The notes below the pieces were generated by a model. It was not told the origin of the DNA, did not search any database, and saw only the letters and a list, made by a program, of their open reading frames with translations. A DNA stretch of 64,000 nt, taken from IMG/VR virus record IMGVR_UViG_3300036944_001289, positions 124,001 through 188,000 of that record; one strand, 5' to 3'. Of the stretch, positions 39,886-62,047 are shown one piece after another (the first letter of the stretch is position 1; each line of letters begins with the position of its first letter). The translations under genes were made by a program, and so were the position numbers.

Positions 39886-41340
39886 TTAGAAGTAAACTGA
39901 CTGATTGCCAGGTGTGAATGCCTGACCGAGTCCGCTTACTATAATAACGTGGTAGTAGAGGTTTGCGCCGAAAATGTTGTCTACAACACCGTAACGGGTT
40001 AATAGACCAACACGTGGTGCAAAGTCGTTCTGACCAATGGTGCGTTGTACCATAACAGGTATGTATGGGCAGTAGATGATACCGGTATCGTAGAATTCTG
40101 GACCCTTGTAGCCAAGTAGTGCATATTCTGGACGATTTGTAGTATCAACGTATTGACCTTCTGTTCTGGTGTCTCTGTAAACCTGGAAACGACCACCAAG
40201 GCTACCTACCTTAGCAACACCGACTGGCTGTGTGTTAACATTGCCTTGAACTGGTACCCATTGGAATTCAGGTAGCATTTCAAGGATTGCGCAAACGCGA
40301 GGTGTTGCAACAATGAAGTTTGCAGCGCCACGACGATTACGTACAGCAATACGGTTAGCTTCGATAATTAGTCTTTGATAGAAGTCACGGTTACGTTCGA
40401 CCAACCAACGGCCATCTGCTGAAGCAGGAGACCAGATAGAATAACCAACGCCAGCACCTGCATTGAGGGCGACTTGGATCATTCTAATAATCATTTCACG
40501 GTCGATTTCGGCCTGAATTTCATAGCTCATAGCGTTTGTTAATTCAGTGTCGATATCAATACCGTTCATGTTCTTGAGGTCTTGCTCAAGCTCTACGGAC
40601 CAGCGGGCGCCTAAGCGTCTTGTACCAGCTTCAACAGCAGTCTTTTCAAATGAAACTTCAAATGTCGGAATGTTTTCCGAGATTTCAAAGCTTGATAGAA
40701 GAGCTGCTACACCGTTATTTTGACCGTTATTAATAAAATTAACGGGCAATGCAGAGCTACCAGAAAGGTAGGCTGCGGATGTACCGGTGTAAGCACTGTT
40801 AAGGTACTGATAGCCTGCTTCCTGACCAGCTGCAGAGGTAAGAATACCAGACTGACCGGCAGGAGCGTTGCCATTAGAACCTAAAGTGCTACCTGTGTAG
40901 CGATAACGAAGAGCGAATGCGAGACCTACTGGACCAGCCATTGGTTGAACGCCGACAATTTCGTTAGAGATAAGCTCTGGGAAAGTACGGCGGATCATGG
41001 GGATCAAGATTTTTGGAAGACGGTAGTCACCAGGTGCGTATGTATCTGTACCAGGTGTACCGGTAGAGTTCCATGAGTTCATACCTGCTGTGCCACCAAC
41101 TGCACCACCGAAACCGGCAGTATTAACTGTACCGGATGGGTTGTAGTTAGGACCAGCTTCGTTAACCATACACCATTGCTCTTGGTTTTCCAATAGCATT
41201 GCTGTATTTAAACGGGTGTGGTTGTCTTCAATCGGAGCAACGTTCTTAGAAGAGTAATCCAAAACTGGACCCCACTTCTCAAGAAGCGCCTTTGCTCTTG
41301 ATTCATTGATATATGCTTGTGTAGGACGAATAGTGTTCAT
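39886..41340 (-). CDS. major capsid protein gp23
   Basis: LLEKW.PVL, TA.LLENQ, VGVQPMAGPVGLAFALR, RRL.ARWSVELEQDLK, EIDRE, YCPYIP, TRYG. Confidence 0.97.
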   Translation of the reverse strand: MNTIRPTQAYINESRAKALLEKWGPVLDYSSKNVAPIEDNHTRLNTAMLLENQEQWCMVNEAGPNYNPSGTVNTAGFGGAVGGTAGMNSWNSTGTPGTDTYAPGDYRLPKILIPMIRRTFPELISNEIVGVQPMAGPVGLAFALRYRYTGSTLGSNGNAPAGQSGILTSAAGQEAGYQYLNSAYTGTSAAYLSGSSALPVNFINNGQNNGVAALLSSFEISENIPTFEVSFEKTAVEAGTRRLGARWSVELEQDLKNMNGIDIDTELTNAMSYEIQAEIDREMIIRMIQVALNAGAGVGYSIWSPASADGRWLVERNRDFYQRLIIEANRIAVRNRRGAANFIVATPRVCAILEMLPEFQWVPVQGNVNTQPVGVAKVGSLGGRFQVYRDTRTEGQYVDTTNRPEYALLGYKGPEFYDTGIIYCPYIPVMVQRTIGQNDFAPRVGLLTRYGVVDNIFGANLYYHVIIVSGLGQAFTPGNQSVYF

Positions 41341-45705: not shown

Positions 45706-47475
45706 TTATTGTGGTGCGGGTGTTTCAGCTGGTGCTGCTTCTGCACCACCAGTTTCAACTGGAGCTTCTCCACCTACTTCAGCGGGACCTCCACCAAACT
45801 CCGGTGGTGAACCTGCTGGTGATTGTTGCTCACCCGCACCACCTATTTCACTACCTGCTGCTGCTTGATTTTGTTGACTCATTGTCTGTAGTTGATCTCT
45901 CCAATTTGGACCAGCATTTGTAATATTATTAAGCTCCCACTCAAGCTCTTTATCCTTACGGAGGAATTCACGATTTGCCTTAATGTCAATATCACTCCAA
46001 CCAAGAATTTTCTTTTGTAAATATGTAGGAGAGATAGTAGGATTGCTCGCAAGGGTATTAAAGTTATTTGTTTTAAGTTCTAATTTTTGGCTCTCTCTTA
46101 ACTCATAAAAGTTAGTAGGTACATTAAATTCTAATGATATATGCTGTTCTTTAATGTCGTATTTTTCTACTAGACCTTTAAGATTTAAGTGTGTTAAAAA
46201 TCCATTTTTTAATGCACCTGCAAATTGTTGTTGTAAGCGAATAATAAACTTAGCAAACTTGAGCTCTTCTCTTAAAATTTCTGCACCATCTTTGAAAGTA
46301 CTCTCAGAGTTAAGTCTATTAGTAGGTACTTTTAATGATTTGTAAAGTTTGTTTACAAAGTACATTAAGTCTGTTAGCTCACCAAGATTTGCACCACCAG
46401 CTAATTGTGTAACAGATGTGCCTTCGCTACCTTGTCTTTTTGCAAACCAAAAAGAGTCCAACATTGATTGTGGATTAAATTTCTGAACTATACCAGATTG
46501 ATTGACGTCGAAAGTCTTCTTGCTCCAGTACTCTTGAATTAATTTACGTAAATAAGCTTCAGCTTTTGGTGGTGGCATGTTACCAACATCAACATTAAAT
46601 ACTAGACGTTCAGGAGCTCTTACCAATCTATATATTACTATAGAGTCTTCTATAAGAGATAACTGTCTGTAAGCTCTTCTTGAATTTTCAATAAACGGTA
46701 ATCTAAAAGATTTATCTTGATTCCATATGCCAGAATTAATATATGTAACCTGGTTTTTATCCATAGGGATAAACTCATACTTAATTACTTTATTAGGCTT
46801 AGCAGGATCAAAAATAGGCTTTCTTAGAATATAACCTTTAATAATCATATTCTGAATATTATCAAAAATAGGATCGATTAACTCCGTAGGCAACTGTACC
46901 ACGCCAAGTATACCTTCTTCTGGAAACTTTTTATGAACTACATGTTCAAAGTAAACTTCACCCTCCACTATTAACTGTCTAAAATATTCCCAGCCTTTTC
47001 TTTCAAGATTAAAATATTCTACGTATTTTTGAAACTCTTTAATTATCTGTTCCTTATCTATATCTTTTAAGTCAATATTTTTAAATTGTAACTTAACAAT
47101 ATCACCTGCTTGATCTTTATTGATTGTTTCATCACAAATCTCATCTAAACAATCAGATATTTCAGAGAATGCCGCCATCACTCTGTAATCCATTATTCTC
47201 GCACCCTTATCAGCCTGTATATTGGCATATACCATATCATTGTATATGCCACCTTTTGCTATAGAACCAGATGGTGTGTTATTATAATCATTATCAAAAA
47301 ATACGCTATTACGAGCTAAAGCTTCGGAACGTTTAGACCCTGTGTCCTGGAATATTTGATACTTAGGATTTATCTGATTTAAGTATCCATTTAGATCAAG
47401 AGTTTGGTATGGTAACTTATTTACAAGGTTTTTAAAGAAACCACCGGATACTGTATTTTTATCGTCTGCAGCCAT
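45706..47475 (-). CDS. portal protein gp20
   Basis: RQLSLIEDSIVIYRLVRAPERLVFNVDVGNMPPPKAEAY, GEILREELKFAKFI.RLQ. Confidence 0.97.
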   Translation of the reverse strand: MAADDKNTVSGGFFKNLVNKLPYQTLDLNGYLNQINPKYQIFQDTGSKRSEALARNSVFFDNDYNNTPSGSIAKGGIYNDMVYANIQADKGARIMDYRVMAAFSEISDCLDEICDETINKDQAGDIVKLQFKNIDLKDIDKEQIIKEFQKYVEYFNLERKGWEYFRQLIVEGEVYFEHVVHKKFPEEGILGVVQLPTELIDPIFDNIQNMIIKGYILRKPIFDPAKPNKVIKYEFIPMDKNQVTYINSGIWNQDKSFRLPFIENSRRAYRQLSLIEDSIVIYRLVRAPERLVFNVDVGNMPPPKAEAYLRKLIQEYWSKKTFDVNQSGIVQKFNPQSMLDSFWFAKRQGSEGTSVTQLAGGANLGELTDLMYFVNKLYKSLKVPTNRLNSESTFKDGAEILREELKFAKFIIRLQQQFAGALKNGFLTHLNLKGLVEKYDIKEQHISLEFNVPTNFYELRESQKLELKTNNFNTLASNPTISPTYLQKKILGWSDIDIKANREFLRKDKELEWELNNITNAGPNWRDQLQTMSQQNQAAAGSEIGGAGEQQSPAGSPPEFGGGPAEVGGEAPVETGGAEAAPAETPAPQ

Positions 47476-56423: not shown

Positions 56424-56807
56424 ATGGAAAATATTTTTCTTACACAATATATAAATGAAGCTTTTGATACAAAATCTTTAGCAGCTCATAGAAAAAGTCT
56501 AATATCTAAATACGGTAAAAAGGGTACGACAAGTGTAAAAGACGTAATAATAACTCCAGAGAAATTACAAATGCTCAAGACTATCAGAAATGATATGGGA
56601 TTATTTAATGAAGGTGAGCCTGCACCAGCTTGGAATAGTTTTACAGCAGCGCTACTAAACAATATAAAAACCAATCCAGTTTTTGTTAAGAAGATGCTAT
56701 CTAACGAGCAAACAGCTAAAAAATTTATAGCGTCCTTTATATTAAAGTTTAGACGCGAAATTGAAAGTACTTCCAGCTACCTTAGCGAAAAATTAAAGAC
56801 TGGTTAA
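56424..56807 (+). CDS. late hypothetical protein
   Basis: MENIFLTQYINE leader. Confidence 0.6.
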   Translation: MENIFLTQYINEAFDTKSLAAHRKSLISKYGKKGTTSVKDVIITPEKLQMLKTIRNDMGLFNEGEPAPAWNSFTAALLNNIKTNPVFVKKMLSNEQTAKKFIASFILKFRREIESTSSYLSEKLKTG

Positions 56808-57611
56808 GTCGTTATACATTTGTATATCTTCTGTACTATACTGCTTAGTTAGTTGCTTAAACTCACCAGGTAATATTTGTTTACCATCAATGTAATACTC
56901 CATAATATCAGGTAGAACTGAGCCTGATGGACTAGTCATACCATAAAAATTAATTATAATGGCAGGGCCTGTTAGACGGTGAAGCTGACCGTGTTTTAAC
57001 CACTTTGTTTCCTTAGTTTTACTAAAAGAAGAAGGCTGTAAGATATAAGCAGGTTTATCATCTTCTCTGTGTAATCTATTTTGAGGATCACGATACTGTA
57101 TAAGTTCTCTATTGCTGGCTGTTATAGAAGTTTGTTTCTTGTATTGTAACTTACCTTCAATATAAAAATCTTCATCTTTAAACTTACCGCTTCCTTGTGA
57201 AATATATACATTTGCAGGTCCACCTATACGGTGATACTTGCCATTTTTGTACCATTCTTGTGATTCTATCTTACCATTTTTTATAGTAGTTTTAGCAGGG
57301 CCATTCTCCCTGTTCAACTTACCGTGTGTATACCAAGCTTCAATATGATGTATATTGGGATACTCTTGTATAATCTCATTAAGATTTAACTCTAGAGACC
57401 ATTCATTATCAGTTAAAATCATAGCAGGTCCATCATCTCTATGTAATCTACCTTGTTTATCTCTCCATGATTTTCTGGTATATACTTCGTCGAATGCTGA
57501 ACTATCTCTTTTAGATACGTGTGTTCGAGTAGTTTTCTCTACATCAGTAGGTGGTATAAGATACTTACTCTTAAGGCCTTCCTGTAAATAAAATTTTTTA
57601 AACGATAACAT
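56793..57611 (-). CDS. LHRxDGPA-repeat protein with shared C-terminal tag
   Basis: Five degenerate repeats; MLSFKKFYLQE leader. Confidence 0.8.
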   Translation of the reverse strand: MLSFKKFYLQEGLKSKYLIPPTDVEKTTRTHVSKRDSSAFDEVYTRKSWRDKQGRLHRDDGPAMILTDNEWSLELNLNEIIQEYPNIHHIEAWYTHGKLNRENGPAKTTIKNGKIESQEWYKNGKYHRIGGPANVYISQGSGKFKDEDFYIEGKLQYKKQTSITASNRELIQYRDPQNRLHREDDKPAYILQPSSFSKTKETKWLKHGQLHRLTGPAIIINFYGMTSPSGSVLPDIMEYYIDGKQILPGEFKQLTKQYSTEDIQMYNDLTSL

Positions 57612-57988
57612 TACGAATTAAGGTCGTTTAGTATATCAAGATCTTCATCAGTGTAATCTTTAGCTGCTTGAGATACTTCATTAGGTAAGACTTCTTTACC
57701 TTTAATATAGTATTTCTTCTCGATGAGAGAACCGTCTTGATCATACTCTTCTAAAGCAGGACCTTTTATATTGTGTAATTGACCATCTCTATAATGAGAT
57801 ATAAGTTTAGGCTTACCATCTTTATAGAATAGCTCTACAGCAGGACCACTCTCATTATGCAGTACTTTAGTACTTGGCTTAAAAACGACATTAACACCTA
57901 CTACACCATTACCCCAATTTAAAGTGTAAGCATTACTACCAGTCTCAGACATTTCATTTAAGATTTCTAGAAGAGCGTTGAAATTCAT
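57611..57988 (-). CDS. LHRxDGPA-repeat protein with shared C-terminal tag
   Basis: Two repeats; MNFNALLEILNE leader. Confidence 0.8.
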   Translation of the reverse strand: MNFNALLEILNEMSETGSNAYTLNWGNGVVGVNVVFKPSTKVLHNESGPAVELFYKDGKPKLISHYRDGQLHNIKGPALEEYDQDGSLIEKKYYIKGKEVLPNEVSQAAKDYTDEDLDILNDLNS

Positions 57989-58005
57989 ATGTTAATATTT
58001 ATTAT

Positions 58006-58554
58006 TTATGAATTTAAGTCATCTAAGATATCTAAGTCTTCTTTATCATATTGCTTAGTTAGCTGTTTAAATTCATTTGGTGTTAGTTCTTTACCATCTA
58101 TATAGTACTCTTCTTCTATTTTATCACCATTTTGATTCCACACTTGACTAGCAGGACCATCTAAGCGATGAAGCTTGCTATCTTTATACCATTCTTCACT
58201 TCGCCTTTTACCATTTTTATGCCATGATTGATAAGCAGGTCTATCTAACCTATAACGTTTATTATCTCTAAACCATTCTTCAATATGTTTTTGACCATCT
58301 ATATACCACAGTTGAACAGCAGGACCATCTAAGCGATGAAGCTTGCTATTCTTAAACCACTCTTCAAATTCTTTTTGACCATTTTTATACCACCATTGAC
58401 GAGCAGGACCATCTAATCTATGAAATTCACCATCTTTAAGCCATTCTTCAGACTTAAGCTTTGTATCATCCTCATCCCAATACGTATGTATAACTTTAAT
58501 ATCTTGGTAATCTTCAATATTCTCTACTAATAAAATCAATTGATCAAACTTCAT
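58006..58554 (-). CDS. LHRLDGPA-repeat protein (4 x 28 aa) with shared C-terminal tag
   Basis: 84-bp repeat units; MKFDQLILLVE leader. Confidence 0.85.
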   Translation of the reverse strand: MKFDQLILLVENIEDYQDIKVIHTYWDEDDTKLKSEEWLKDGEFHRLDGPARQWWYKNGQKEFEEWFKNSKLHRLDGPAVQLWYIDGQKHIEEWFRDNKRYRLDRPAYQSWHKNGKRRSEEWYKDSKLHRLDGPASQVWNQNGDKIEEEYYIDGKELTPNEFKQLTKQYDKEDLDILDDLNS

Positions 58555-58562
58555 AAGATTAT

Positions 58563-59186
58563 TTATGAATTTAAGTTATCTAATATATCCATATCTTCTT
58601 TATCGTATTGCTTAGTTAGTTGTTTAAGCTCATTTGGTGGTATTTCTTTACCGTTTATATAGTACTCTTCAATCATCTTTTGACCATCTTCATCCCACTC
58701 TTGACTAGCAGGACCATCTAAGCGATGAAGCTTGCTATCTTTATACCATTCTTCAAATTCTTTTTGACCATTTTTATACCAATCTTGACGAGCAGGTCCA
58801 TCTAAGCGATGAGGTCTACCATCTATATAGTACTCTTCAATCATCTTTTGACCATTTGTATACCAGTATTGACGAGCAGGTCCATCTAATCTATGAAATT
58901 CATCATCTCTAAACCATTCTTCAATATATTTTTGACCATCTATATACCACAGTTGAACAGCAGGACCATCTAAGCGATGAAGCTTGTTATCTTTATACCA
59001 TTCTTCAAATTCTTTTTGACCATTTTTATACCACCCTTGACGAGCAGGACAATCTAATCTATGAGGTTTACCATCTTTATACCAATACTCCTCCTTAGGT
59101 TTTGTCTCAGCATCATCCCAGTACACTCTTTCAACTCGAATATTTTCATTATCTTCTGCTAATAAAACTAAATCTTTAAACTTCAT
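58563..59186 (-). CDS. LHRLDGPA-repeat protein (5 x 28 aa) with shared C-terminal tag
   Basis: 84-bp repeat units; MKFKDLVLLAE leader. Confidence 0.85.
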   Translation of the reverse strand: MKFKDLVLLAEDNENIRVERVYWDDAETKPKEEYWYKDGKPHRLDCPARQGWYKNGQKEFEEWYKDNKLHRLDGPAVQLWYIDGQKYIEEWFRDDEFHRLDGPARQYWYTNGQKMIEEYYIDGRPHRLDGPARQDWYKNGQKEFEEWYKDSKLHRLDGPASQEWDEDGQKMIEEYYINGKEIPPNELKQLTKQYDKEDMDILDNLNS

Positions 59187-59341
59187 AAGATTATTTATAA
59201 GAAAACCTCTCTTTATATTTTTACGCCGCCCAAAAATTCCCGAAAGGCGTAATACTATCTATATTACCGAAAGTTCCGGGCCCTATATAGCGTTTCTATT
59301 TTTCTGCGCGCGTCGCGAGAATTTCCGAGGGTTCCGAGCTT

Positions 59342-59436
59342 TTTATGGTTCCGAGCGCTCTCTGCGGCGAATATAGAATTTCCCGCGACTTTTGCGGCGA
59401 GAATAGCGCTATTTATGGTTCCGAGCGCTCTCTGCG
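59342..59436. repeat. 25-bp direct repeat TTTATGGTTCCGAGCGCTCTCTGCG x2 (70-bp period) in a GC-rich patch
   Basis: Copies at 59342-59366 and 59412-59436. Confidence 0.9.
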
Positions 59437-59837
59437 CAGAGAATTGGGCATGGGGCTCATTATACGAAAGTTCCTTTAACTAATAAGTGAAAACTCCTTT
59501 GCCCTGGTCTCTGAAACCTTTTTATATGAAAACCTTTTTTGAACTAGAGGTTCCGACTTTTCCGAAAAAAGTTATCTGCGATATAACCACTATCTTTTCT
59601 GAAAAGGTTCCTTTTATGCAGCCAAAGGAACATCTATATAATTAATGTAACTATTTATTATGAAGCGACAACCATTAGCTTATCCGAAATGTATAATATG
59701 AAATATTCTTTTAGGAGTTATATATCAAAGCTTTTCTGAAATGTATAATATGAAGATAGTATATAGCAGTTTCTGAAAAGTATAATATGAAGACCAATTA
59801 AGGCTACAAATAATATGCAGCCCTAATAAGTGCTAAC

Positions 59838-60032
59838 TTATCCTTTATTACATTCTTCCCAACAAGTTAGCTCATCCTCGTTTTCTAATATTAATACCAG
59901 ATCTTTTAAGTCATCAATTAGTTGTTGCAAATCTATTTTATCTTTAATGGCGTCTTCCTTTAATAGAGGATGCCCTTTAACAGGTTCTTTTTCTAGATAT
60001 TTCTTTGCAAGTTCTAAATGTTTATTTGTCAT
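59838..60032 (-). CDS. small early-type protein
   Basis: 64 aa; GGAAC-N5-TATACT upstream (60053-60068). Confidence 0.55.
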   Translation of the reverse strand: MTNKHLELAKKYLEKEPVKGHPLLKEDAIKDKIDLQQLIDDLKDLVLILENEDELTCWEECNKG

Positions 60033-60269
60033 AATAATTAGGGTGCATAATAAGTATATACTTGTTCCATCCTATAAAGTGAAACATTATTATATGAAAC
60101 CATTATTTAATACCGTTTCAGAAACGCTCTTATATGCAAAAGAGGTGATCAACCGTTTCAGAAAAGTATTATATGAAATATGTACTAGAGCGGTTTCTGA
60201 AAGCTACAAGAGGATATCAGATCAACAAACTTTTCAGAAATAAACGGATTTGAAAAATGAGTGAGAAAA

Positions 60270-60306
60270 TAATAGTAGGCTGCTTATATTAAGCAGCCTA
60301 CTATTA
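60270..60306. terminator. hairpin terminator downstream of the 60319 ORF
   Basis: TAATAGTAGGCTGCTTA-tat-TAAGCAGCCTACTATTA. Confidence 0.75.
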
Positions 60307-60318
60307 TGCTAATTACTT

Positions 60319-60681
60319 TTAGTCAATGCTGGGTTCTGAATCTTCGTCATCCGAATCCATATCTTCATCTTCTACATCCTCCACCATATCATTCTTCTTA
60401 ACCTTACCTGCCGCAATCAAACGACGCGCTTCCTTTTGCGCCTCCTTAAACTCTTCATACTTAGCCTTGCGACGAGCCTCCTTTTCCTCAGCCTCAATCT
60501 TATTCTTAGCTTCCGCTGCCAATTCCATCTCTTCCATATGCTGAATGGCCGCATCCAAAATTGCGGTCATCGTATCTTTTTCCGTCAAGTTAAGCTTCTT
60601 GCGGATTTCGATAATGCGATTCTTATCGGCTTCATGGAGTAGAGCTGCGGTGAACTTGGCTGGCACTTTTAGGGTCTTCAT
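60319..60681 (-). CDS. RHH-like DNA-binding protein with coiled coil and acidic tail
   Basis: beta-strand then two helices (KFTAALLHEADKNRIIEIRKKLNLTEKDTMTAILDAAI); visibly higher GC than the bulk genome. Confidence 0.5.
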   Translation of the reverse strand: MKTLKVPAKFTAALLHEADKNRIIEIRKKLNLTEKDTMTAILDAAIQHMEEMELAAEAKNKIEAEEKEARRKAKYEEFKEAQKEARRLIAAGKVKKNDMVEDVEDEDMDSDDEDSEPSID

Positions 60682-61196
60682 TTTAGTAGTTAGTTTGTTG
60701 TTGTTGTTAATAAGGGCTCTATCGGCCCTACATTTATATTACTAAAGTTCCGTTGTAAGAGTTGAAGGAGGATCCGAGGAAAAATAAGTCCTAAGCTTTT
60801 CAGAAAAGTAAAAAATGCAAGCCGCACTTTTCTGAAAAAATAGAATACACCTTTCATACCTGACTTTTCTGAAAAGCTTTGAATGCTGCTTCCAATTCGT
60901 AAACCACTTTTCGAGGAACTTTGATATTATAAAGTTTAAGGGTCTATATTTTTCCTGTATACTATTTCAGTTCCTGCGTTTCGTACGCATTAAAATGCAA
61001 GGCTTTATATGATACTAATATAAAAGAAGCTTACAAGTACGCAGGAACAAGTACTTGTGCCTAGTAAGCAGGAACTGGAACAGAGTACTATATAGCCGTA
61101 CTAAGAATCGGAACAATAAGAAAGGAGAGCCGCATAAAGCAGACTCTCCTTGTTCCTATATACTAGCTAACTAAAACTGTTCCTAGATACTATTGA

Positions 61197-61379
61197 TTAC
61201 TTACTAATCTTATCATCGACCTTATTTGAGAAGTATAGCATGATATAACCGAATACTGCCATCTTAATGATTACTAGTACTTGCATTACTAGAGTAGTTT
61301 GTTGCTTGAATGTAGCTCCTTCTAAGATAGCCAGTATTAGAAAGAATAGTGTTAGTAGTAGATTGATAGCTGTACGCAT
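61197..61379 (-). CDS. small two-TM membrane protein
   Basis: Two hydrophobic helices in 60 aa. Confidence 0.5.
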   Translation of the reverse strand: MRTAINLLLTLFFLILAILEGATFKQQTTLVMQVLVIIKMAVFGYIMLYFSNKVDDKISK

Positions 61380-61439
61380 ATAGTATGATCTAATATGTAT
61401 ATGAGGTTCTTATATCCAAGAATAACAATGTGTTTCGGG

Positions 61440-61469
61440 GCTCTCAGAGCGCTGTTTGTCTCTGAGAGC
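61440..61469. other. GC-rich hairpin without U-tract
   Basis: GCTCTCAGAG-N10-CTCTGAGAGC. Confidence 0.6.
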
Positions 61470-61510
61470 TGGGCGGGGCTATGATATCAGTGAGTGGGTT
61501 CTGTGAATGG

Positions 61511-62047
61511 TTAACTCATCTCGTCTAACCAGTTTTTGTAATAGGCTCTACCAGCTTTTGCTGCATTTGGACCACCTATAAATAGTGTTAACCCACCTGA
61601 ACCTACTACGAAACGTGGACCTCCACTTTGTTTATACAAAATCTCAGTGCAAGCCAAAATTGTAAGCTTACCACTAGCAATTGAATTAAAGAATGATAAT
61701 GGATCATCCACGAGTGTGATGTCTTTTGTTTTGAATACTCCTTTAGCAATAGCATCTTCGATAGTTAATTTAGCCTCGTCTGCATCTGGACCTGGTTTAC
61801 CAGTGTCGACGAATTCATAAGGCATATGTAGCATAAGGTCTTCAAACCCATAATTAGTGTAGATGTCTGAATTATTATCTTCTGGTAAAATTATAAAACA
61901 GGTTGGATCATCACCAAGACTATCATAGTTATCTTCGCACCTTACTACCGCGTTAGCTACTTTTGTTCCGTAGTCCTCGTCGGTGTTCTCTTTATAGATA
62001 GAAGCATAAGCTTCTGAAATTAACTTATAATCATGTTTGTCTTTCAT
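61511..62047 (-). CDS. acidic late protein
   Basis: TAAATA 5 nt upstream; KLISEAY...YKE leader. Confidence 0.65.
   Translation of the reverse strand: MKDKHDYKLISEAYASIYKENTDEDYGTKVANAVVRCEDNYDSLGDDPTCFIILPEDNNSDIYTNYGFEDLMLHMPYEFVDTGKPGPDADEAKLTIEDAIAKGVFKTKDITLVDDPLSFFNSIASGKLTILACTEILYKQSGGPRFVVGSGGLTLFIGGPNAAKAGRAYYKNWLDEMS

What the first reader, a model, noticed from the sequence alone, without database searches (positions are those of the whole stretch)
59596..60874. Ten TTTCWGAAA operators in regularly spaced arrays flanking an RHH-like gene
Seen: clusters at 59733/59770, 60116/60156/60194/60232 and 60798/60829/60866 (31-40 bp spacing) plus 59596; I did not notice the 9-mer elsewhere in the window. 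Several copies abut GTATAATATGAA (-10-like) elements. The arrays bracket the 120-aa RHH-like/coiled-coil/acidic ORF, whose base composition differs from the rest. Inference: a cognate protein-site pair, resembling a centromere-adaptor (ParR/parC-like), an origin, or a master switch for early transcription.
Basis: partly seen in the sequence, partly recalled or inferred. Interest (0 to 1): 0.65.

Follow-up and report, generated by a model that had tools for sequence, protein, structure and literature searches.

The report
Palindrome arrays around a phage RHH gene
An uncultured T4-like phage carries three conserved clusters of the 9-bp palindrome TTTC-N-GAAA around a small, unclassified ribbon-helix-helix-like DNA-binding gene; this is most likely a self-contained protein and operator regulatory module, not a plasmid-style centromere or a genome-wide switch.

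Summary
All ten TTTCWGAAA copies sit at the stated coordinates, against 1.67 expected in the window. An eleventh copy (TTTCCGAAA) lies at 59559. In the complete 209,282-bp phage genome, 11 of 13 TTTCNGAAA copies fall within 2.3 kb, and no other short palindrome clusters like this.

Seven related metagenome contigs keep the half-sites: 56 of 56 positions are identical, against about 67% in the spacers. The centre base, spacer sequence and spacing (31-51 bp) all drift.

The 120-aa ORF has no Pfam, PHROG or PDB match. Its sequence pattern, weak fold matches, language-model neighbours and a predicted intertwined homodimer all point to a ribbon-helix-helix (RHH) fold. It belongs to an unnamed family of about 56 clusters.

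A diverged lineage (55-65% identity, changed beta-strand) has TTTCNGAC arrays in the same layout.

Each array lies after a terminator hairpin and 5' of a GGAAC-N5-TAnnnT promoter-like element on the minus strand.

Best reading: cognate operator arrays for local auto- and neighbour regulation (confidence 0.5).

I found no ParA, tubulin or MreB-type partner and no GC-skew sign of an origin. The sites are confined to this locus, so a master switch is not supported. Binding and transcript direction are untested, because no RNA data could be obtained.

The parts
60798..60874 (.). Upstream array U: three TTTCWGAAA palindromes at 60798, 60829 and 60866. It lies 5' (on the minus strand) of the promoter-like element of the RHH-like gene. 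The centre of the proximal site is 51 nt from the GGAAC.
   Evidence: all 24 specified positions are identical to L045, while the spacers are about 59% identical
60736..60751 (-). Promoter-like element GGAAC-N5-TAATAT for the RHH-like gene. A small hairpin follows at 60714-60728, then an A/C-rich leader.
   Evidence: this motif class occurs 51 times in the genome; its promoter function is inferred
60319..60681 (-). 120-aa ORF. It has an RHH-like N-terminal domain (about residues 8-50), a long helix to about residue 90, and an acidic tail ending in the conserved SEPSID.
60271..60305 (.). Perfect 15-bp-stem hairpin. It is followed by a T-run on the minus strand and is the terminator of the RHH-like gene.
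   Evidence: conserved in relatives
60076..60240 (.). Middle array M: four TTTCWGAAA at 60116, 60156, 60194 and 60232, plus a degenerate AAAGTGAAA at 60076.
   Evidence: 32 of 32 site positions are identical to L045; L008 has a fifth copy
60053..60068 (-). Promoter-like element GGAAC-N5-TATACT for the 64-aa ORF. The centre of the proximal full site is 52 nt upstream.
59838..60032 (-). 64-aa ORF with no family match. It is a variable cassette, replaced by a different ORF in L006 and L046 while the arrays stay.
59802..59822 (.). Hairpin after the 64-aa ORF, a terminator candidate on the minus strand.
59508..59778 (.). Downstream array D. It has TTTCTGAAA at 59770, 59733 and 59596, TTTCCGAAA at 59559, and degenerate copies at 59681 and 59508. 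The hairpin at 59606-59631 is made of inverted GGAAC motifs.
59627..59642 (+). Plus-strand promoter-like element GGAAC-N5-TATAAT, pointing into array D. It is kept in L005 and L006 with a changed spacer.
59459..59474 (-). Promoter-like element GGAAC-N5-TATAAT downstream of array D. A second one at 59261-59277 precedes the MORN-like repeat genes, which start at 59186.

Best explanation
TTTC-N-GAAA is the operator of a dimeric ribbon-helix-helix-like protein encoded by the 120-aa ORF that the arrays bracket. Each dimer is proposed to place its two-stranded beta-ribbon on one 9-bp palindrome. Three arrays of three to six sites sit in three consecutive intergenic regions. Each array lies after a terminator hairpin and 5' of an early/middle-class promoter-like element (GGAAC-N5-TAnnnT) on the minus strand. 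Those elements precede the protein's own gene, a variable 64-aa cassette, and the run leading to the MORN-like repeat genes. The protein would therefore autoregulate and co-regulate its neighbours by multi-site, probably cooperative, occupancy. The long helix and the conserved acidic tail would be free for higher-order assembly or a partner. What is shown: the clustering, the conservation, the palindromic constraint, the layout and the predicted dimer. What is inferred: the fold assignment, binding of this protein to these sites, the promoter identity, and the sign of regulation.
For: Clustering: there are 11 sites in 2.3 kb against 2 in the other 207 kb. Selection acts on the half-sites only. 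Against the 77%-identical relative L045, 56 of 56 specified positions are identical, compared with 326 of 484 other noncoding columns. The centre base takes all four letters and the spacing drifts from 31 to 51 bp. The protein shows the RHH sequence pattern of strand KFTAALL, helix, and helix N-cap NLTEKD. The AlphaFold monomer has helices 17-30 and 34-90 with a disordered N-terminus. The top Foldseek rows are AmrZ, CopG, ORF56, PutA and MatP, but at E about 2. The nearest Pfam-bearing Atlas clusters are all RHH_1/9/5/3 at 0.84-0.86. The homodimer model scores 0.58 against a best control of 0.00; that mark was reached by 20 of 30 solved one-chain pairs and 1 of 23 single chains. The runs agree in 100% of contacts, partner pLDDT is at least 82, and the interface covers residues 10-17, 19-26 and 34-51, as in an intertwined RHH dimer. 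Co-variation: proteins P0009 and P0010 (strand K[FY]TACLV, shorter N-arm) are flanked by TTTCNGAC[TA] arrays in the same array-promoter-gene-terminator-array layout and have no TTTCNGAAA. The neighbouring 64-aa gene is exchangeable while the arrays stay, so it is not the binder.
Against: All array-bearing contigs belong to two related lineages, so the co-variation is a single contrast. In lineage B only one half-site changed, which a symmetric dimer does not explain simply. Family members with the same beta-strand (P0011 in L039, P0014 in L051) and the phage's own paralogue (genome 194000-194314) have no flanking arrays. The sites lie about 70-190 nt upstream of the predicted start points rather than over the core promoters, which is unusual for RHH repressors. 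The gene has the highest GC3 in the genome and capsid-like codon use. That hints at an abundance greater than a repressor of a dozen or so sites would need.
Confidence: 0.5

Rival explanations
1. The arrays are bound by some other factor, and their adjacency to the 120-aa gene reflects shared ancestry of the locus. Candidates are the phage's second family member (104 aa, basic tail, genome 194000-194314) or a host protein.
For: A paralogue exists with 38% identity. Most of the family has basic tails and no arrays. All array-bearing loci are syntenic relatives.
Against: The site type changes together with the adjacent protein lineage. The array brackets this gene in every relative. No evidence points to any particular other binder.
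Confidence: 0.18
2. The units are tandem promoters, or RNA polymerase recognition elements, with the palindrome joined to a TATAAT-like hexamer. They would fire on the plus strand (antisense or non-coding RNAs) or on the minus strand, with the palindrome at the start site.
For: TATAAT lies 2-7 nt from some sites, always on the same side, and two copies read TGTATAAT. A conserved plus-strand GGAAC-type element points into array D.
Against: Only 11-19 of 66 site contexts have the hexamer. Array U has none. The constraint is a symmetric 4-N-4 with a free centre, which fits a dimer and not a polymerase. The simple sigma-70 scan finds fewer sites than in shuffles. The plus strand has no conserved ORF.
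Confidence: 0.1
3. The locus is a replication origin or another architectural locus, with iteron-like sites nucleating a complex beside AT-rich DNA.
For: It is a gene-poor 2.3-kb hub with many repeats, hairpins and AT-rich spacers. Codon use suggests an abundant protein.
Against: There is no cumulative GC-skew extremum or strand switch here. No initiator, helicase-loader or primase gene is adjacent. The sites are palindromes with drifting spacing, not phased direct iterons. The skew test is weak for T4-like phages.
Confidence: 0.08
4. The locus is a ParR/parC-like centromere, with the RHH adaptor linking the genome to a filament or ATPase.
For: The architecture resembles ParR: an RHH domain, a helical region, and a conserved C-terminal peptide after an acidic tail. 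Site arrays flank the gene.
Against: PF01656 gives only sub-threshold P-loop hits. PF13614, PF00091 and PF06723 give none in a genome rated 100% complete. The StbA search was uninformative because the controls were silent. This is a T4-like virulent-type genome. The repeats are not contiguous.
Confidence: 0.06

Closest known systems
Omega repressor of plasmid pSM19035 (RHH; from my own knowledge)
   Same: A small RHH dimer binds arrays of short repeats upstream of several promoters, including its own. Many sites per array imply cooperative binding.
   Different: Omega binds contiguous 7-bp heptads that overlap the promoters, and it also serves a ParA-type ATPase. Here the sites are 9-bp palindromes 31-51 bp apart, upstream of the core promoter-like elements, and no ATPase partner was found.
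ParR/parC of plasmids R1 and pSK41 (from my own knowledge)
   Same: An RHH N-terminal domain with a C-terminal partner-binding tail, and repeats on both sides of a promoter at its own locus.
   Different: parC consists of contiguous direct repeats, and ParM is encoded in the same operon. Neither feature is present here.
MetJ and its metbox arrays (from my own knowledge)
   Same: One RHH dimer binds each short palindrome (8 bp there, 9 bp here), with 2-5 copies per operator.
   Different: Metboxes abut each other and overlap promoters, and MetJ needs a co-repressor.
Phage P22 Mnt and Arc (from my own knowledge)
   Same: Phage RHH regulators. Mnt adds a C-terminal coiled coil for higher-order assembly.
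   Different: Each has a single operator over a promoter in a temperate phage. There is no sequence similarity by Pfam or PDB searches.

Membership tests
Ribbon-helix-helix (RHH/MetJ-Arc) fold | N-terminal strand followed by two helices, with a G/N-x-S/T cap on helix B | tested here: met
   The alignment shows KFTAALL, then helix, then NLTEKD, then helix. The AlphaFold model has H17-30 and H34-90, and the strand region is disordered in the monomer, as expected. This is a prediction only.
Ribbon-helix-helix (RHH/MetJ-Arc) fold | Intertwined homodimer pairing the two N-terminal strands | tested here: met
   The homodimer model scores 0.58 against a best control of 0.00. The interface covers residues 10-17, 19-26 and 34-51 in both copies. 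This is a model, not a measurement.
Ribbon-helix-helix (RHH/MetJ-Arc) fold | Significant sequence or structure match to a known RHH family | tested here: inconclusive
   There is no Pfam, PHROG or PDB sequence hit. The top Foldseek rows are RHH proteins, but at E about 2. The Atlas neighbours are RHH_1/9/5/3 at 0.84-0.86, which is lead level only.
Ribbon-helix-helix (RHH/MetJ-Arc) fold | Sequence-specific DNA binding through the beta-ribbon | not testable with these tools
   This needs EMSA, footprinting or a structure.
ParR/parC (type II) or ParG/omega (type Ib) partition | Partner NTPase (ParM actin-like or ParA Walker-type) encoded by the replicon | tested here: not met
   PF01656 gives 15.5 bits, below the 25.4 cut-off. 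PF13614, PF00091 and PF06723 give no match. For PF06406 the controls were silent, so that search is uninformative.
ParR/parC (type II) or ParG/omega (type Ib) partition | Centromere of contiguous direct repeats overlapping the operon promoter | tested here: not met
   The sites are palindromes 31-51 bp apart and lie 50 nt or more upstream of the GGAAC elements.
Iteron-type origin | Phased direct repeats beside an initiator gene, with compositional signs of an origin | tested here: not met
   The sites are palindromic with drifting spacing. There is no skew extremum. No initiator gene was recognised nearby. The skew test is weak for this phage type.

The most novel reading that the evidence does not exclude
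The arrays and the abundant RHH-like protein, with its long helix and conserved acidic SEPSID tail, form a higher-order nucleoprotein hub. The hub would bridge the three arrays and recruit a host or phage machine. Possible roles are an enhancer- or insulator-like organiser of early/middle transcription, or a genome-anchoring point. A previously unnamed protein family that is widespread in uncultured phages would carry this out.
Probability: 0.15. Interest if true: 0.7.

Novelty: new variant of a known kind. Interest (0 to 1): 0.45.

Why it matters
Transcription control in T4-like phages outside the T4 and cyanophage models is almost unknown. This locus offers a compact, testable protein and operator pair from an unnamed family of about 56 clusters at 50% identity, with no Pfam, PHROG or PDB relative. 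A natural specificity variant (TTTCNGAAA against TTTCNGAC, with Ala13 against Cys13 on the strand) could map RHH recognition rules. The locus also exposes the two promoter-like classes of this phage group. If the protein is simply a local autoregulator, the finding is a tidy but ordinary addition to RHH biology.

Tried and rejected
- **Known RNAs:** the Rfam scan of 58800-61800 gave only sub-threshold noise.
- **Cultured relatives:** megablast and tblastn against GenBank phages found no relative of the locus or of either paralogue.
- **IMG/VR protein searches:** these returned only the same phage.
- **Wide alignment as a query:** alignment A3 was too diverse to use.
- **Metagenome scan:** this gave three more close relatives only.
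- **IMG/VR pattern scan:** the scan for three spaced sites returned 28 other contigs with tandem repeats of period 21, 36 or 42. None encodes a homologue, so I set them aside as unrelated.
- **Restriction avoidance:** the core TCNGA is only mildly under-represented, at 0.74-0.85 of expectation.
- **Small-RNA idea:** the GC-rich stretch 59200-59455 folds no better than shuffles, z -0.5.
- **Third site type:** beside P0017 (L043) there are only two palindromes, too few to count.
- **P0020 (L054):** this locus shows direct repeats, not palindromes.
- **Complex prediction:** the first call found the machine busy. The repeat of the same request ran.

Full report
**Context**

The window is bases 124001-188000 of a single 209,282-bp IMG/VR virus record. 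The record has direct terminal repeats and is rated 100% complete. GC content is 33%. The genome encodes a T4-type major capsid protein (39886-41340, minus strand; Pfam Gp23, E 7e-90) and a T4-type portal (45706-47475; Portal_T4, E 1e-99). It also carries 27 tRNA genes. The capsid protein is only about 34% identical to its best cultured matches, which are cyanomyoviruses. This is therefore a distant, uncultured T4-like phage. Its host is unknown.

**Observation**

The expectation was 1.67, and 0 of 100 shuffles reached 10.
- Allowing any centre base adds TTTCCGAAA at 59559.
- Degenerate copies lie at 59508, 59681 and 60076.
- Genome-wide, 11 of 13 TTTCNGAAA copies lie in the gene-poor stretch 59187-61510.
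- The remaining 206,958 bp hold 2 copies against 5.7-8.5 expected.
- A scan of all 4- and 5-bp-arm palindromes shows this is the only one that clusters.
- The -10-like GTATAATATGAA abuts three to four copies here. Across relatives only 11-19 of 66 site contexts carry such a hexamer.

**Conservation**

The word search found 11 metagenome homologues of the 120-aa protein. Contigs for the closer ones are L005, L006, L008, L040, L045, L046 and L047, with 77-92% protein identity. All keep the arrays in the same three places.

Against the most distant of these (L045), all 56 specified site positions are identical, while 326 of 484 other noncoding columns are. The centre base takes all four letters. 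The spacers diverge freely and the spacing ranges from 31 to 51 bp. This constraint fits a 4-N-4 palindrome read by a symmetric dimer on DNA. It does not fit an RNA structure or a polymerase element.

**The protein**

No Pfam, PHROG or PDB sequence match exists. Four weak lines of evidence agree on a ribbon-helix-helix fold:
- The sequence pattern is strand KFTAALL, a helix, then an NLTEKD cap and a second helix.
- The AlphaFold monomer has helices 17-30 and 34-90 with a disordered N-terminus. Mean pLDDT is 73.8, and about 90 over residues 21-70.
- The top Foldseek rows are AmrZ, CopG, ORF56, PutA and MatP, at E about 2 and rmsd 1.4-2.2 over 33-39 residues.
- The nearest Pfam-bearing Atlas clusters are all RHH families.

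A homodimer model scored 0.58 against a best control of 0.00. That mark was reached by 20 of 30 solved one-chain pairs and 1 of 23 single chains. The runs agree in 100% of contacts and partner pLDDT is at least 82. The interface covers residues 10-17, 19-26 and 34-51, which is the intertwined RHH pattern. The helix beyond residue 51 is not in that interface. The acidic tail ends in a conserved SEPSID.

The exhaustive profile search with the N-terminal domain found 56 clusters at E up to 0.001. These are small proteins with the domain at the N-terminus, mostly followed by a Lys/Ala-rich tail. None matches Pfam, PHROG or PDB. The family is real and unnamed.

**A paralogue**

The phage has a second member of the family at genome 194000-194314, outside the window (104 aa, 38% identity). 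Both paralogues share the capsid gene's preference for AAG over AAA: 15 of 17 and 16 of 17 lysine codons, against 7 of 8 in the capsid gene and 0.34 genome-wide. This suggests high expression. The paralogue has no flanking arrays.

**Co-variation**

Proteins P0009 and P0010 are 55-65% identical to the window's. Their strand reads K[FY]TACLV instead of KFTAALL, and their N-terminal arm is shorter. They have no TTTCNGAAA. Instead they have about 7-15 copies of TTTCNGAC[TA], in both orientations. The layout is the same: array, GGAAC-type element, gene, terminator hairpin, array, next GGAAC-type element.

This is the strongest computational support for a cognate pair, but it is a single contrast, and only one half-site changed. 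Two further lineages with the window's strand sequence (P0011 in L039, P0014 in L051) show no arrays in their short flanks. The arrays are therefore a derived feature of one branch of the family.

**Layout and mechanism**

A second motif, GGAAC-N4-6-TAnnnT, occurs 51 times in the genome. Forty per cent of all GGAAC copies lie in the 12.6% of the genome that is intergenic. In 15 cases a called ATG lies 5-9 nt after the hexamer. Relatives keep the motif while its spacer changes.

Structural genes are instead preceded by ATAAATA-type elements close to the ATG, like T4 late promoters. I therefore read the GGAAC class as the early/middle promoters of this phage. This is an inference.

On the minus strand the order of features is:
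- Array U (60798-60874), then promoter-like element P60751, then the RHH-like gene, then the hairpin at 60271-60305.
- Array M (60076-60240), then P60068, then the 64-aa cassette, then the hairpin at 59802-59822.
- Array D (59508-59778), then P59474 and P59277, then four MORN-like repeat genes.

The proximal full site lies 51 nt from the GGAAC in array U and 52 nt in array M. The 64-aa gene is replaced by another ORF in L006 and L046 while the arrays stay, so it is not the binder.

The most economical mechanism is multi-site occupancy of three upstream arrays by the RHH-like dimer, controlling its own promoter and the two that follow. I cannot say whether this activates, represses or insulates.

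**Rivals**

- Another binder, such as the paralogue or a host factor, cannot be excluded.
- A promoter reading of the units is weakened by the minority of hexamer-bearing sites and by the symmetric constraint.
- An origin has no skew or strand-switch support.
- A partition system lacks any ParA, tubulin or MreB-like partner in a complete genome. The StbA search was uninformative.
- A genome-wide early switch is excluded by the confinement of the sites to one locus.

**Limits**

No protein-DNA modelling tool was available. All relatives are short metagenome contigs. My gene map comes from a simple codon-score ORF caller and misses some genes.

**Verdict**

This is a real, conserved and unusual cis-element array, paired most plausibly with a new RHH-like regulator. 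In kind it is a variant of known RHH and operator-array systems. Its interest is moderate, and higher if the complex proves to be architectural.

Noticed in passing
whole genome; in the window e.g. 62920, 63422, 60751, 60068 (minus strand): The promoter-like motif GGAAC-N4-6-TAnnnT occurs 51 times and is strongly intergenic. In 15 cases the called ATG lies 5-9 nt after the hexamer, which would give leaderless or near-leaderless mRNAs. Related, GC-richer phage contigs (L039, L051) keep it as GGAAC-N5-TATAAT followed by ttaGGTGC. I could not match it to a known promoter class.
   Followed up: partly
window upstream of 41340, 42275, 43137, 45666, 49792, 52029: Structural genes are preceded by ATAAATA(A) elements only a few bases from the ATG, like T4 late promoters. 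A weak Sigma70_r2 hit at genome 122496-122645 may be the gp55-like late sigma factor. No AsiA or MotA hit was found, but the controls for those searches were silent.
   Followed up: partly
genome 194000-194314 (outside the window; L049:1486-1800, minus strand): This is a second member of the same RHH-like family (104 aa, basic tail, 38% identity). It has no flanking arrays. It shares the high GC3 and the AAG codon preference of the 120-aa gene and the capsid gene.
   Followed up: partly
window 59187-59480: This is a conserved GC-rich (45%) noncoding stretch between array D and the MORN-like genes. It holds five GGAAC copies and a repeated GCGCTCGGAACCATAAA unit, and it is nearly identical in L005. 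Its RNA fold is no better than shuffles (z -0.5).
   Followed up: partly
window 56793-59186 (minus strand): There are four tandem paralogous genes (272, 125, 182 and 207 aa) built of repeats of the type YKNGK.HR.DGPA, all ending in a shared DILDDLNS-like tail. They are MORN-like by eye, but have no Pfam hit at E 0.01.
   Followed up: no
window 60880-61200 and 61197-61379: This is a nearly invariant block with inverted GGAAC/GTTCC pairs around a hairpin (61122-61151), and it is duplicated in L008. In L006-L008 the adjacent 60-aa hydrophobic ORF is replaced by TATA-rich repeats (TATANTATA).
   Followed up: no
L012, L015, L021, L024, L032, L033 and others (IMG/VR contigs): Unrelated viral contigs, including giant-virus bins, carry tandem arrays containing TTTCWGAAA with periods of 21, 36 or 42 bp, often at contig ends. 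None encodes a homologue of the 120-aa protein.
   Followed up: no
P0001 and P0010 (metagenome homologues): The source names given to two homologues are MnmG/GidA tRNA-modifying enzyme and PrlF antitoxin. Both look like mis-annotations, since the only family hit is a sub-threshold MazE match at E 0.011.
   Followed up: partly
genome 1-200 and 209083-209282: The contig ends consist of a short-period coding-like repeat (units such as GGCATTACCACAGACC) that overlaps between the two ends. This is the basis of the 'direct terminal repeat' call, and it may instead reflect circular permutation.
   Followed up: no
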